Below are positions 59,779-64,000 of a stretch of DNA of 64,000 nucleotides, piece after piece. Both the position numbers and the translations under genes were made by a program. The notes under the pieces were generated by a model. The model was given only the letters and a program-made list of their open reading frames with translations, had not been told where the DNA came from and made no database searches. This DNA is from Octopus sinensis (lineage: Eukaryota): assembly GCF_006345805.1 (NCBI RefSeq), contig NC_043012.1, forward strand, positions 56,978,001 through 57,042,000, in the 5' to 3' direction. The first letter of the stretch is position 1; each line of letters starts with the position of its first letter.

Positions 59779-60446
59779 TAACGTGAAATACACGAAGAGA
59801 CGAACAAAAAGACAAATAAGTCATTCAAGCCTTTATTCTTCAGTCAGAAACTGATCCCTCATCGCAGATTTCGGCTGTTTAATTCTGAGATCCGCTCTGA
59901 ATCAGCCAGCCACAGAAGGAAAGAATGAAACGCAACAGAGACGAACAGGAAACAAAAAAATCTTTTTTGGGGACAGTAACGATTGAAAACATGAATGACA
60001 CAGGCGCCCTACGGCTTTGAGACAAACAGAGAGACACAAAAATAATAATAATATGTATATATATATATTCCTCTTTATATATATAGTGATATACTACAAT
60101 AAACATATTTCGATTGGAAAAACAACAAAAAATGAGGAATGTAAAAACTAATTGCGAAACGAAATAGTTTCATTTGGTGTAAACGGATGCAATATGTATC
60201 CTTGTGTAAATAATATTATCATAGTTAAACCAAGCTCTGAATAAGCCAAAGATTTGGTGTTGGTGTTGATAGCTAATCGTATATCTCTTGTGTGCCATGT
60301 TTGTCATTGTAGATTCTGTGATCAAATCCTGGAGGGGGTTTCCTCAATGCAAGGGGTCTATCCTGCATACATTGTAACGTATAGTCTGTTATTCAATTAC
60401 TTTGTAACGTGAAAGGATCTATCATCGAAGCACTGGCAGGGTGTCG

Positions 60447-62369
60447 ATGATAGATCCTTTCACGTTACAATTGGTGACCCTCTCTGTTGAGGCAGTGACA
60501 GCCTTTGAGTCCATTAAGAAGGAGCTGGCTTCTGTTTCTTTGCTTGCACATCCAGTTCCTGGTGCTTCTCTCTCTTTGACTGTGGACGCATCGGACACTG
60601 CGATTGGCGCTGTGTTACAACACACAGTGGATGACCATGTTCGACCTCTAGCCTTCTTTTCCCGTCAACTGCAACCAGCTGAACGACGATACAGCACCTT
60701 TGATCGTGAGCTCCTAGCGATCTACCTATCGGTTCGTCATTTCCAGCATCAACTTGAAGGGCGAGATTTTGTGATCTATACGGATCACAAGCCCCTTACG
60801 TTTGCCCTGTTTTCAAAAACGGACAAACTCTCACCCCGTGCTTTTCGGCACCTGGATTTTATCTCTCAATTTACTAGCAACATTCGACACATACCTGGAA
60901 AAGAGAACGTTCCTGCTGACGCTCTCTCTCGCCTTCCAGTTTGCGCCCTTTCGTCTCCTGCTGCTATCGACTTAGCTGCCATATCGCAGGAGCAGCCACC
61001 TTTGGCGTCGTTAGATTTAACTTCTCCCAAGTTCTCCTGTTGCCAGTTTTCCTACCTTCCGCTTCCGTCAGCCGAAGGCACCATTCTTTGTGACACTTCA
61101 ACTGGATCTCCCAGGCCACTGGTGCCTGAGACCCATCAACGCTCAGTGTTTGAAGCACTGCACTCCTTATCACATCCTGGCATCGCTGCCACCCTCAAAC
61201 TAATCACTGCTCGGTTTTTCTGGCCGAATATGCGTCGCACAATTACTTGTTGGACACGCACCTGCTCCAAGTGTCAACGATCCAAGATTCAACGGCACGT
61301 TCGTGCCCCGCTTGGACAATTTCCCCCCACGGAGGCCCGTTTTCGCCATGTCCACATCGATCTGGTTGGACCATGGCCTGTGAGTCGCGGGTTCTCTTAT
61401 CTATTAACTTGTGTCGATCGTTTCTCCCGCTGGCCAGAAGCCATTCCGATAGCAGACATTTCTGCTGAGACTGTTGCGCGAGCTTTCGTTTCAAACTGGA
61501 TTTCTCGCTTCGGAGTCCCGTCCCGATTGACAACTGATCGTGGACGACAGTTTGAGGCCTCGCTATTTCGCGAATTGTCGCGAATTTTGGGTATGCACCA
61601 TATCCACACCACAAGCTACCATCCAGCGTCTAATGGATTGGTTGAGCGGTTCCATAGACAGCTCAAGGCCGCTCTTCGTGCCTCTTCGGACCCACAGTCC
61701 TGGATCGAATTTCTGCCCATTGTGCTTCTCGGCTGTCGGACTGCTGTCAAGGCAGACCTGGGGTTTTCTGCTGCAGAGCTGCTGTATGGTACCACACTGG
61801 CATTGCCCGGTACGATGTTGGTGCCAGACACTTCCCCGCCCCATGATCCGGCGACCTATGTCACCAGACTGCGGGAATATTTTTCAAACCTTCCGCCCAT
61901 GCTTCCCAGAAAGCAATCTCCACCGTCCCATCTTCCACCGGATATGAACACCTGGTCGCATGTTTTTGTTCGGGACGATTCTGTGAAGGGCCCACTTGTT
62001 TCTCCCTATAAAGGACCTTTTCGTGTGCTTTCTCGCACACCAAAGGTTTTCACGATTGAGATAAATGATCGTTCGGAGACCGTTTCCGTGGACCGTTTAA
62101 AAAAGGCACATTTTGAGACGTCTTCATCTTTTGATGACAACCTTGACACACCCACCTATGCACCTTTAACAACACTTTCACCTGCACAAACGCCTTCACC
62201 TGCACAAACGCCTTCACCTGCACAAACGCCTTCACCTGCACAAACACCTTCACCGGCTCCTACAACACCACCCTCGCCGTCAACGGGTGCCCCGAGCACA
62301 CCGTATGTTACAAAATCGGGCAGAACAGTGCATTGGCCCAAGAAACTTTCAAAAACAATTTACATTTAA
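60447..62369 (+). CDS. Gypsy RT-connection/RNase H/integrase ORF, 640 aa, no RT domain
   Basis: RNase H DASD, RELLA, TDHKPL, ADALSR. Zinc finger HSLSHPG...CSKC. HIDLVGP, TTDRG, NGLVER with D(35)E spacing. GPF motif. Uninterrupted. The first eight codons from the ATG come from the terminal hairpin. Confidence 0.9.
62177..62254 (+). repeat. 18-bp coding tandem repeat x4 (SPAQTP)
   Basis: ttcacctgcacaaacgcc repeated in frame. Confidence 0.95.
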
Positions 62370-62494
62370 CTTTAAAATGTTTCTTATTGTATAATAGTAT
62401 GTACCAAGTCTTCTGGGGGATCGGCAAGCCTTCTGTTTTCTGCAGCACCACCACAATATTCTGGTTGCCGTACTTCGCACTCGGAGGGGAGCCC

Positions 62495-62838
62495 TGTAGT
62501 GATGCTACAGTGTAGGGTTCGGCGCGCATGCGCAGAATGGGACTACTTCCGGGTGGCCACCGGAAGTCTTCCCCATGCGCATGTGCGGGAAAACATCTCT
62601 CGAGCCCGCGAACCTCAAATCGCTCTCTTCGGCTCAAGACAGCACTGCGATCGGTCACGGTTTTCCTGGCTCTGACAGCCACACACCAACTTCAACCAAC
62701 TTCAACCAACCTCAACGACCAACACCAGCAGTATATCAGAGGCTGTCTATTCCCCCATCAGACAACGTACAACCATGAATCAATAAACCAAGTTGTCTGT
62801 TCACCTTTAACCTGAGTTTCGTCTGTTTGTTTTCTACA
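62495..62838 (+). mobile_element. 3' LTR of the second Gypsy element (344 bp)
   Basis: PPT ggaggggag just upstream. TGTAG...CTACA ends and an internal AATAAA. Confidence 0.85.
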
Positions 62839-64000
62839 AGAATTTTTGTATGTGACTAGAAAGGATCTCGACACCCTGCCAGTGCTTCGATGATAGATCC
62901 TTTCACGTTACAACTTGTTTTAATTATTGGACATCTGCCATGTTGGGGCACTGTTTTCAGAGGTTTAGTTATCTTTTCGCTTTGACCGGCAGATTTTAAA
63001 AATAATTTCTTTGTAACTAAACACTTTTAAACTTCGTATACCGGTAGAATGTGTTTATAAAACATCTTTTTCTCTTGGCTTTCTTCAGAGAATTATGTAG
63101 TTTGTAAGCTATTTGTTGTTTAATTTCTTGCATTTCGGCAATTTCAACCAATCAATGACGTCTATTGAGGTGAATTTTTTTTTAACCCAGAAATACTGTA
63201 AATGTGTGTGTTTCTTTTGATGAAAGGGTGTTTTAAGAGAGATTTGCTATATTTGTAGTAGCTCAAGTTACCAGACACACACACACGTGTGTGTGTGTGT
63301 GTGTGTGTGTGTGCATGTGTGTTTTGTTGTGGGGAAAAAAATACTTTCCCTCGGAATATTTTGCACGATAATTTTTAAAGAAATCTGGTCATCTTTCTTA
63401 CTGCCAACCATCCCACTTCAGATTACAATTGTTAATTGTTGGAAGTCAAGTAGACTGAGATGCACATATACTGTTACCGTATAGAGTGGAAGTTCAATAC
63501 GAAGTCTTGAACTCATTATCCTGTGGTTAGTAACCCATTACCTTAAAGTTGAAACCATTAAGTCTTTAAACATTATTTTGTTTGGTTTTCTTTCGACTGT
63601 TGCCATGATGATGTATCGCCTTCAAAAATTTAATTGATCATACTGACCTCAATACGTATTTCAATCTGGCATTTATTTTATAGATCTCTGCTTGATGAAC
63701 TTCTAACTTGGAGACATAGTGGGACGAATGACTGTGTAGTTGAGAAGTTTGCTTCCCAACCATATGGTTCCATGTTCAGTCGCTTTGCATAGTAGCTTGG
63801 GCAAGTGTTTTCTACTATAGCCCCTAGATCAACCACAGATATCTGACTGAATTTGGTAAACGGAAACTGCAGGGTTGTTAATCACAAAATGACCGAAAAG
63901 CATGTTCATAAGGTAGAGTTGTTTGCTTCATGTTCCACGTGTGCTAATTCTGCCCGTAAGAAAGAAACAATGTGACTGTAGGTCATTACACCTGGGCAAC

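What the first reader, a model, noticed from the sequence alone, without database searches (positions are those of the whole stretch)
60399..62916. Gypsy integrase cassette inside a Ginger-like TGT...ACA inverted-repeat shell with its own 4-bp TSD
Seen: perfect 45-bp TIRs (60403-60447 / 62868-62912) flanked by ACTT on both sides. Each end is itself a hairpin. The left end is arm-15 nt loop-arm (67 bp, to 60469). The right end is the inverted version with a 5-bp deletion and 3 mismatches in the inner arm (62851-62912). Between them lie a Gypsy pol cut exactly at the inner ...TTACA end, an uninterrupted RNaseH-HHCC-DD(35)E-GPF frame, the PPT, the complete 3' LTR and 12 bp of other DNA. There is no RT, gag or 5' LTR. 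The left hairpin supplies an in-frame ATG (60447). Established: Ginger DNA transposons have TGT...ACA TIRs, 4-5 bp TSDs and Gypsy-related integrases, and Ginger1 was proposed to derive from Gypsy elements. Gypsy integrases act on TG...CA ends. Inference: this could be a retrotransposon integrase converted into or carried by a cut-and-paste unit. The mundane alternative is a Gypsy inserted into a pre-existing Ginger-type MITE followed by an adjacent deletion.
Basis: partly seen in the sequence, partly recalled or inferred. Interest (0 to 1): 0.85.

Follow-up and report, generated by a model that had tools for sequence, protein, structure and literature searches.

The report
Defective Gypsy insertion with inverted U5 ends
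The "inverted-repeat shell" is most likely not a DNA transposon: it looks like the retrotransposon's own LTR tip (U5), present normally on the right and as a folded-back inverted copy on the left, so this is probably a misfired reverse-transcription product that the element's integrase still inserted.

Summary
The sequence features are real: perfect 45-bp inverted ends, ACTT on both sides, a perfect 67-bp palindrome on the left, an imperfect 62-bp one on the right, and an open 642-codon RNaseH-integrase frame.

The Ginger-like reading does not hold.
- The right hairpin lines up, in direct orientation, with the U5 end of the closest full-length relative found (Octopus sinensis, 75% nt). The 3' LTR therefore runs 62495-62912.
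- The 11 nt after the left hairpin (AT + TGGTGACCC) are the spacer and the first 9 nt of the tRNA-Trp primer-binding site of this CsRn1-like clade. They are fused to pol codon ~462.
- The left hairpin is an inverted copy of the last 45 nt of U5, followed by a self-complementary arm. The perfect repeat stops exactly where a self-copied strand and the native U5 sequence diverge.

Best model: minus-strand strong-stop DNA snapped back on the U5 hairpin, copied itself and the tRNA tip, then switched into pol. This gave a cDNA with U5 ...CA ends on both sides, which integrase inserted with the clade's usual 4-bp duplication.

No second copy was found anywhere searchable, and nothing indicates cut-and-paste mobility. 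Moderately interesting.

The parts
60399..60402 (.). Left copy of the 4-bp target-site duplication, ACTT
   Evidence: A 4-bp duplication is typical of this Gypsy clade: CTAG in L004; 4 bp in CsRn1-like elements.
60403..60447 (-). Inverted (minus-sense) copy of the last 45 nt of U5: outer arm A (26 nt), loop (15 nt) and TCGA
   Evidence: Exact reverse complement of 62868-62912. Its reverse complement, not its direct form, aligns with the U5 end of the O. sinensis relative (z = 3.3 against 1.6).
60444..60469 (+). Inner arm A': plus-sense U5 terminus ...CACGTTACA, a perfect complement of the outer arm
   Evidence: Identical to the 3' LTR terminus 62887-62912.
60470..60471 (+). AT spacer between the LTR end and the PBS
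   Evidence: Relatives have ...ACA|AAT|TGGTGACC (L002, L003) and ...TTACA|G|TGGTGACC (L004).
60472..60480 (+). First 9 nt of a tRNA-Trp-type primer-binding site, TGGTGACCC, fused to pol
   Evidence: This is the only TGGTGACC in the window on either strand. The same PBS follows the 5' LTR in L001, L003 and L004 and the single assembled LTR of the L002 contig. The published CsRn1-clade PBS is TGGTGA(G/C)CCCG. The last 4-7 nt may be shared with pol codons V-T-L (microhomology).
60441..62369 (+). Open 642-codon frame: 11 codons read through the hairpin, spacer and PBS start, then pol from about codon 462 to its native stop (RNase H, HHCC, DD35E, GPF)
   Evidence: 61% identical to pol residues 462-1072 of P0001.
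62174..62250 (+). 18-bp tandem repeat encoding (SPAQTP)x4 in the pol C-terminal tail
   Evidence: Falls in gapped, poorly aligned tail sequence against P0001.
62483..62491 (+). Polypurine tract GGAGGGGAG
   Evidence: Conserved with L002 (GGGGGAGG) and L004 (GAGGGGGAG), each just upstream of TGTAG/TGTAC.
62495..62912 (+). Complete 3' LTR, 418 bp, TGTAGTGA...CACGTTACA, with AATAAA at 62782-62787
   Evidence: Alignment with both LTRs of L004 from the PPT to the terminal TTACA. PolyA-signal-to-end segment z = 4.3, 0 of 500 shuffles.
62851..62912 (+).
   Evidence: Direct-orientation alignment with the L004 U5 end: z = 3.6, 1 of 1000 shuffles; reverse orientation z = 0.6. L002 also ends its LTR in a quasi-palindrome.
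62913..62916 (.). Right copy of the target-site duplication, ACTT

Best explanation
This is a defective insertion of a CsRn1-like Ty3/Gypsy retrotransposon whose two ends are both U5 ends. The right end is the normal 3' LTR (62495-62912). In this family the LTR finishes in a quasi-palindromic U5 hairpin.

The left end has no U3-R. It holds only an inverted copy of the last 45 nt of U5, then a perfectly self-complementary arm, the AT spacer, 9 nt of the tRNA-Trp PBS, and then pol from codon ~462.

Inferred mechanism:
1. Inside a particle, minus-strand strong-stop DNA was primed from the tRNA and copied AT plus the U5 tip (arm A, the loop, TCGA).
2. It then snapped back on its own hairpin instead of continuing on the RNA. 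It copied arm A (giving the perfect arm A'), the AT, and the 3' tip of the tRNA (TGGTGACCC).
3. Its 3' end paired by ACC(C) microhomology with a normally made minus strand in pol and was extended through RNase H, IN, the PPT and the LTR.
4. The duplex therefore had ...GTTACA|AT-3' on both strands. Integrase trimmed AT and inserted it with the clade's 4-bp duplication (ACTT).

Shown here: the anatomy, the homology of the right unit to U5, the PBS identity and the 45-nt boundary. Inferred: the order of template switches and that integrase did the joining. The open IN frame is simply a young copy of an active element's pol, not a domesticated gene.
For: 1. The right unit is collinear with the U5 end of the closest full-length relative found, in direct orientation only. 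Another relative (L002) also ends its LTR in a terminal quasi-palindrome.
2. AT + TGGTGACCC directly follows the left unit, just as spacer and PBS follow the LTR end in L002, L003 and L004; L001 carries the same PBS upstream of its pol. It also matches the published CsRn1-clade tRNA-Trp PBS. ATTGGTGACC occurs once in the window.
3. The loop of the left unit is flipped relative to native U5, and its arms pair perfectly (26/26), while the native hairpin is imperfect. All 4 differences sit in one arm.
4. The perfect inverted repeat stops at nt 45, after the palindromic TCGA. That is exactly where native U5 (TCGA|GATCC) and a self-copied strand (TCGA|TGATAGATCC) diverge.
5. TGT...ACA ends with a 4-bp flanking repeat equal the clade's integrase signature.
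6. [quoted passage not shown] Concerted integration of two U5 ends with the genus-specific 4-bp duplication is documented in vitro for PFV integrase.
Against: - The parent family (over 90% identical) was not found, so the native 5' LTR-PBS junction of this family is inferred from relatives that are 65-75% identical.
- U5 homology to L004 is modest: z = 3.6-4.3 over 62-133 nt.
- GTGACC could be native pol codons (V-T; relatives have I/L-T). That would leave only ATTG as unexplained filler, although a chance 10/10 match to the spacer and PBS is unlikely.
- Only one locus is available, with no reads and no empty allele.
- A 4-bp flank match has a 1/256 chance expectation.
- Self-primed products are regarded as dead ends in vitro. 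I know of no verified report of one rescued and integrated.
Confidence: 0.6

Rival explanations
1. Post-integration DNA rearrangement. A normal, or already internally deleted, two-LTR copy integrated at ACTT. Later the 5' LTR lost U3-R-U5 up to its terminal hairpin through TGT(A) microhomology. The quasi-palindrome was then 'corrected' and its loop inverted by replication template switching.
For: It shares all evidence that the units are U5 and that the PBS follows. Both the LTR start (TGTAG) and the hairpin start (TGTGAC/TGTAAC) begin with TGT, so a microhomology deletion could leave ACTT next to the hairpin.
Against: It needs three or four independent events: the LTR deletion, arm correction, loop inversion and the PBS-pol deletion. 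Each must land on an exact boundary. A simple inversion would move the 5-bp deletion to the other arm rather than erase it (sequence logic).
Confidence: 0.2
2. A pre-existing Ginger-like or foldback MITE with 62-67-bp TIRs sat at ACTT. A Gypsy copy inserted into it, and a TACA(A)-microhomology deletion removed the 5' LTR.
For: TGTAA termini and a 4-bp TSD fit the Ginger pattern TGTNR. The hairpin end (GTTACA) and a candidate LTR end (CTACA, 62838) share TACA.
Against: - The right unit aligns with the U5 of a related Gypsy in direct orientation, and the alignment runs through the supposed 'LTR end + 12 bp'.
- ACTT fits neither Ginger target preference.
- No other copy of the unit exists in the window, in 100 kb of related loci (O. 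bimaculoides, O. sinensis, two unidentified assemblies), or in three public collections.
- The individual units have no TSDs of their own.
Confidence: 0.08
3. The unit is a functional cut-and-paste element: an integrase gene mobilised, or self-mobilising, through its inverted ends.
For: An intact 642-codon RNaseH-IN frame with all catalytic motifs. The inverted ends are the integrase's cognate U5 substrate, and a 4-bp TSD flanks the whole unit.
Against: - Single copy wherever a search was possible. The best protein relatives are at most 78% identical.
- There is no identifiable promoter upstream of the frame; this is inference, and the only LTR lies downstream.
- The PBS remnant, PPT and full LTR mark the cargo as raw retrotransposon cDNA.
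- By established knowledge, retroviral-type integrases are not known to excise integrated DNA.
Confidence: 0.04
4. Assembly or sequencing artefact, for example a chimeric or fold-back read creating the left palindrome.
For: Perfect palindromes are a known product of library and read artefacts (general knowledge). The structure is single-copy.
Against: The palindrome ends exactly at a biological terminus (TGT/ACA) and is flanked by a matching 4-bp repeat. The unit matches no plasmid or vector, bacterial or viral sequence. The flanks continue as ordinary unique DNA.
Confidence: 0.04

Closest known systems
CsRn1-like clade of Ty3/Gypsy LTR retrotransposons (CsRn1, PwRn1, AgCR; relatives here in Octopus sinensis, O. 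bimaculoides and flatworms)
   Same: tRNA-Trp PBS TGGTGA(G/C)CCCG, 4-bp TSD, TGT...ACA LTR ends, PPT directly upstream of the 3' LTR, RH-IN order, and 61% aa (up to 75% nt) identity to full-length members.
   Different: There is no 5' LTR (U3-R), gag, protease or RT. The left end is an inverted U5 tip, and only 9 nt of the PBS remain.
Self-primed (snap-back) minus-strand strong-stop DNA of HIV-1 (cTAR hairpin), normally suppressed by nucleocapsid
   Same: A hairpin in the nascent minus-strand DNA folds back and is extended by RT on itself. The left unit has exactly that arm-loop-perfect-arm form, followed by a copy of what lay 5' of the hairpin (spacer, tRNA tip).
   Different: The HIV case is an in vitro dead-end product at the R (cTAR) hairpin. 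Here the hairpin is at the U5 tip next to the primer, and the product appears to have been completed and integrated in a genome.
Ginger1 / Ginger2 (TDD) DNA transposons
   Same: TGTNR termini, 4-bp TSD, TIRs of 40-270 bp, and an integrase of Gypsy type between them.
   Different: Ginger1 targets CCGG/CCGT and Ginger2 targets RTATAY, whereas the target here is ACTT. Ginger elements encode no RNase H and carry no PPT, PBS or LTR. Ginger families are multi-copy. Here the 'TIRs' are U5 of a Gypsy LTR.
In vitro concerted integration of donor DNAs carrying two U5 ends (e.g. prototype foamy virus integrase)
   Same: Two U5 termini are inserted together with the genus-specific 4-bp duplication.
   Different: Those are synthetic substrates in a test tube. 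Here it would be a natural cDNA in a germ line.

Membership tests
Ginger1/Ginger2 DNA transposon (autonomous or MITE) | Termini 5'-TGTNR...3' with TIRs of about 40-270 bp | tested here: met
   TGTAA...TTACA; 45 bp perfect, 62-67 bp overall. Criterion. Gypsy LTRs share the same terminal pattern, so it does not discriminate.
Ginger1/Ginger2 DNA transposon (autonomous or MITE) | 4-bp TSD at CCGG/CCGT (Ginger1) or within AT-rich RTATAY (Ginger2) | tested here: not met
   The length is 4 bp, but the sequence is ACTT in the context ATT-ACTT-GTT. Preferences.
Ginger1/Ginger2 DNA transposon (autonomous or MITE) | Transposase is an integrase without RT or RNase H, and the element has no LTR, PBS or PPT | tested here: not met
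   The ORF begins with an RNase H domain collinear with Gypsy pol. A PBS remnant, PPT and 418-bp LTR are present.
Ginger1/Ginger2 DNA transposon (autonomous or MITE) | A family of copies sharing the termini, at different sites | tested here: inconclusive
   No other copy in the window, in six related loci, or in the metagenome, viral, prokaryote and plasmid collections. The host genome itself could not be searched.
CsRn1-like Ty3/Gypsy LTR retrotransposon | tRNA-Trp primer-binding site TGGTGA(G/C)CCCG just after the LTR end | tested here: met
   TGGTGACCC at 60472-60480, 2 nt after ...TTACA. Only the first 9 nt are kept.
CsRn1-like Ty3/Gypsy LTR retrotransposon | 4-bp TSD, TGT...ACA LTR ends, PPT abutting the 3' LTR | tested here: met
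   ACTT/ACTT; LTR TGTAG...TTACA; PPT at 62483-62491. Compare L004: TSD CTAG.
CsRn1-like Ty3/Gypsy LTR retrotransposon | pol with RT-RNaseH-IN closest to clade members | tested here: met
   The RH-IN part is 61% identical to pol of P0001 and 68-78% to Octopus proteins. The hit list also holds many Schistosoma, Spirometra and Sparganum proteins. RT is absent because of the deletion.
CsRn1-like Ty3/Gypsy LTR retrotransposon | Two direct LTRs and gag with the CHCC motif (an intact element) | tested here: not met
   There is no second copy of 62370-62850 in the window and no gag, PR or RT. It is therefore a defective derivative, not an intact member.

The most novel reading that the evidence does not exclude
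A single reverse-transcription error (snap-back at the U5 hairpin) turned a Gypsy element, in one step, into an integrase gene flanked by inverted copies of its own attachment site. That is the architecture of a Ginger-type DNA transposon. Such cassettes could be, or occasionally become, mobilised as DNA. This would give a concrete route from LTR retrotransposons to integrase-type cut-and-paste transposons.
Probability: 0.05. Interest if true: 0.85.

Novelty: new variant of a known kind. Interest (0 to 1): 0.42.

Why it matters
If the model is right, this locus is a genomic fossil of a reaction known only from test tubes. Self-primed strong-stop DNA is regarded as a dead end. Here it appears to have been completed and integrated through two U5 ends.

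It would show that an LTR retrotransposon's integrase accepts a U5/U5 substrate in vivo. It also suggests a testable one-step origin for inverted-repeat-flanked integrase cassettes, which bears on the open Gypsy-Ginger relationship.

Practically, it warns annotators that TGT...ACA inverted repeats with a 4-bp TSD around Gypsy fragments can be LTR tips rather than Ginger TIRs.

Tried and rejected
- **Exact-protein look-up of the ORF:** not on record.
- **Two homology searches** (full ORF, then the first 193 aa to expose short near-identical fragments): the best hits were 68% and 78% (Octopus). Neither the parent family nor a second composite turned up.
- **Exact scans for the 26-nt arm:** JGI metagenomes, GTDB genomes and IMG/VR gave 0 hits. 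BLAST against plasmids gave nothing.
- **Sensitive BLAST of both units** against six related loci: chance-level hits of 10-14 nt only.
- **Degenerate copies of the unit in the flanks:** none above shuffled controls. The TGTAACGT 8-mer 30 bp upstream is at chance level.
- **Paralogous empty site in the window:** none.
- **Rfam and tRNA scans of the window:** nothing.
- **Two independently inserted MITEs:** rejected, because neither unit has its own TSD.
- **LTR ending at CTACA (62838) with the 5' LTR 'replaced' by a MITE** through TACA microhomology, or capture of a one-LTR cDNA at a break in a MITE. These were my own first readings. I dropped them once the O. sinensis LTR aligned through to 62912.
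- **Reading the two units as direct mini-LTRs:** rejected, because the 15-nt loops are exact reverse complements of each other, 15/15, against 8/15 by eye in direct register.
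Full report
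**1. The observation**

The region was read directly and checked with repeat finding and a script.
- 60403-60447 is the exact reverse complement of 62868-62912 (45/45). The 46th position differs.
- ACTT lies immediately outside both ends.
- The left unit (60403-60469) is a perfect palindrome: arm A TGTAACGTGAAAGGATCTATCATCGA, loop AGCACTGGCAGGGTG, and arm A' as the exact complement of A. As single-stranded DNA it folds at -30.1 kcal/mol, z = -13.
- The right unit (62851-62912) has the reverse-complemented loop and an identical outer arm. Its inner arm carries 3 mismatches and a 5-bp deletion. It folds at -11.1 kcal/mol.
- The 26-nt arm occurs only at these three places in 64 kb, against 0 expected. 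BLAST of the whole element against the window finds nothing else.
- The frame 60441-62369 is open for 642 codons. It carries RT_RNaseH, Integrase_H2C2 and rve domains, with H-x3-H/C-x2-C, D, D-35-E and GPF.

**2. What the cargo is**

The best database relatives are full-length Gypsy pol proteins. These are P0001 from a Logan assembly (62%), P0002 from an ENA assembly (61%) and an Octopus bimaculoides protein (68%). The list also holds many Schistosoma, Sparganum and Spirometra proteins. A second search with the first 193 residues raised the best identity to 78%, for an Octopus sinensis protein.

tblastn shows homology from pol residue 462 to the native C-terminus, and no RT, protease or gag anywhere in the window. 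Repeats in the window match O. sinensis and O. bimaculoides DNA at 85-98%, so the host is an octopod. Its own genome could not be searched with these tools.

**3. First correction: a primer-binding site sits between the hairpin and pol**

The 10 nt after the left unit, ATTGGTGACC, occur once in the window. The same 10-mer follows the LTR end in two relatives. In L002 it reads ...CTACA|AAT|TGGTGACCTGGCGTGAT, and in L003 ...CTAAA|AAT|TGGTGACCCCGC.

The two Octopus relatives have TGGTGACCCCGA (L001) and ...CCATTACA|G|TGGTGACCCCAAG (L004). TGGTGA(G/C)CCCG is the published tRNA-Trp PBS of the CsRn1 clade, which also makes 4-bp TSDs.

So the cargo starts with spacer AT and 9 nt of PBS, fused to pol codon ~462.

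One caveat. Relatives have I/L-T-L-S where the window reads V-T-L-S. The last 4-7 nt of the 'PBS' may therefore double as pol codons. That is what a microhomology-guided template switch would look like, but it also weakens the match slightly.

**4. Second correction: the right hairpin is the LTR's own U5 end**

The O. sinensis relative (L004, 75% nt identity in pol) is a full-length element. It has 537-bp LTRs (TGTAGTGA...CCATTACA), a CTAG duplication and the PPT GAGGGGGAG.

| Semi-global alignment against the L004 U5 end | z | Shuffles reaching the score |
|---|---|---|
| Right unit, direct orientation | 3.6 | 1 of 1000 |
| Right unit, reverse complement | 0.6 | 271 of 1000 |
| Left unit, direct orientation | 1.6 | 78 of 1000 |
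| Left unit, reverse complement | 3.3 | 7 of 1000 |
| PolyA signal to LTR end, direct | 4.3 | 0 of 500 |

L002 also ends its LTR in a quasi-palindrome (GTAGTTAGAACTCCG...CGGAGGTTCCTACA) whose stem contains the LTR terminus.

I conclude that the 3' LTR is 62495-62912 (418 bp). The right 'TIR' is native U5, and the left 'TIR' is an inverted copy of it.

**5. Mechanism**

Read in plus sense, native U5 ends A*-L'-A', followed by AT and the PBS. Minus-strand strong-stop DNA therefore begins (tRNA)-AT-A-L-TCGA-GATCC...

The left end of the insertion reads A-L-TCGA-TGATAGATCC...(= A')-AT-TGGTGACCC. This is what results if the nascent strand folds at the palindromic TCGA after 45 nt. It then copies itself back through A, the spacer and the first 9 nt of the tRNA tip. 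This accounts for several features at once:
- the flipped loop;
- the perfect left palindrome beside an imperfect native one, with all four differences in one arm;
- the repeat boundary at exactly nt 45;
- the spacer and PBS right after the hairpin;
- the absence of U3-R on the left.

A further switch by ACC(C) microhomology into pol joins this strand to a normally made minus strand that carries RH-IN-PPT-LTR. The finished duplex has ...GTTACA|AT-3' on both strands, which is the integrase substrate. A 4-bp duplication follows.

Each step has a precedent. Hairpin self-priming of strong-stop DNA is documented for HIV-1 in vitro. Concerted insertion of two U5 ends with a 4-bp duplication is documented for PFV integrase. 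I also recall, unverified, 1980s reports of defective avian retroviral DNAs with inverted U5 sequences.

The anatomy is shown. The order of events is inferred.

**6. Rivals**

- **Post-integration rearrangement of a normal copy** fits the same homologies. It needs several independent events, each landing on an exact boundary (about 0.2).
- **A Ginger-like MITE shell** is disfavoured for four reasons. The right unit is homologous to U5. The ACTT target matches neither Ginger preference. The individual units have no TSDs. No other copy was found (about 0.08).
- **A functional cut-and-paste unit** has no positive evidence beyond the intact frame (about 0.04).
- **An assembly artefact** cannot be excluded without reads. 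It is unlikely given the biological termini and the matching flanks (about 0.04).

**7. Comparison and novelty**

By membership this is a defective CsRn1-like Gypsy insertion. The PBS, TSD, LTR ends, PPT and pol homology criteria are met. Two LTRs and gag are not.

It is not a Ginger element. The target preference and the 'no RNase H, LTR, PBS or PPT' criteria are not met, and the multi-copy criterion is inconclusive.

What is unusual is the U5/U5 architecture and its apparent origin by snap-back. I rate it a new variant of a known kind. It is of moderate interest to people who study reverse transcription and transposon origins.

The most novel reading still open is that such errors create integrase genes flanked by inverted attachment sites, that is, proto-Ginger cassettes. 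It rests on one locus and has no evidence of DNA mobility.

Noticed in passing
window 9-1021 (+): A second, unrelated retroelement integrase fragment (HHCC region and rve core, about 21-25% identical to P0001). It runs off the left edge of the window.
   Followed up: no
window 10387-11238, 31030-31513; single units near 1755, 13900, 23700, 29400, 46900, 52300: A SINE-like unit (core ...GGAATTTGAACTCAGAACGTAG...) occurs dispersed and as head-to-tail arrays with a 184-bp period. ARAGORN and Rfam call nothing there.
   Followed up: partly
window 9638-10030, 13456-13856, 22692-23113, 41804-42206, 44612-45063, 46013-46726, 55766-56196: A repeat family of about 420 bp, 85-93% identical to O. sinensis L004:2760-3187, which lies near a Pif1-like (helitron-type helicase) gene call. 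It supports an octopod origin for the window.
   Followed up: no
window 62174-62250: An 18-bp tandem repeat encodes (SPAQTP)x4 in the C-terminal tail of pol. In the tblastn alignment to P0001 this region falls in gapped, poorly aligned tail sequence.
   Followed up: partly
window 60373-60380: The only TGTAACGT outside the hairpins lies 30 bp upstream of the left end. Local alignment of the unit to the flank is at chance level.
   Followed up: yes
L004:6829-12548 (Octopus sinensis CM016874.1): An apparently full-length CsRn1-like Gypsy: LTRs about 96-97% identical over the stretches compared, TSD CTAG, tRNA-Trp PBS. RefSeq annotates part of its pol as 'uncharacterized protein LOC115220280'.
   Followed up: partly
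L003, L005, L006 (ENA assembly ERZ21867824): Long contigs of an assembly filed as a metagenome carry several Gypsy copies of this clade. They look like eukaryotic host DNA rather than microbial DNA.
   Followed up: no
window 38199-38671 and 5756-6137, 6695-6800, 8080-8190, 14477-15204: Very long microsatellite or low-complexity tracts: (GA)n-rich with strong GC skew, (AC)n/(GC)n, (ATAC)n and (ATCT/GTCT)n.
   Followed up: no
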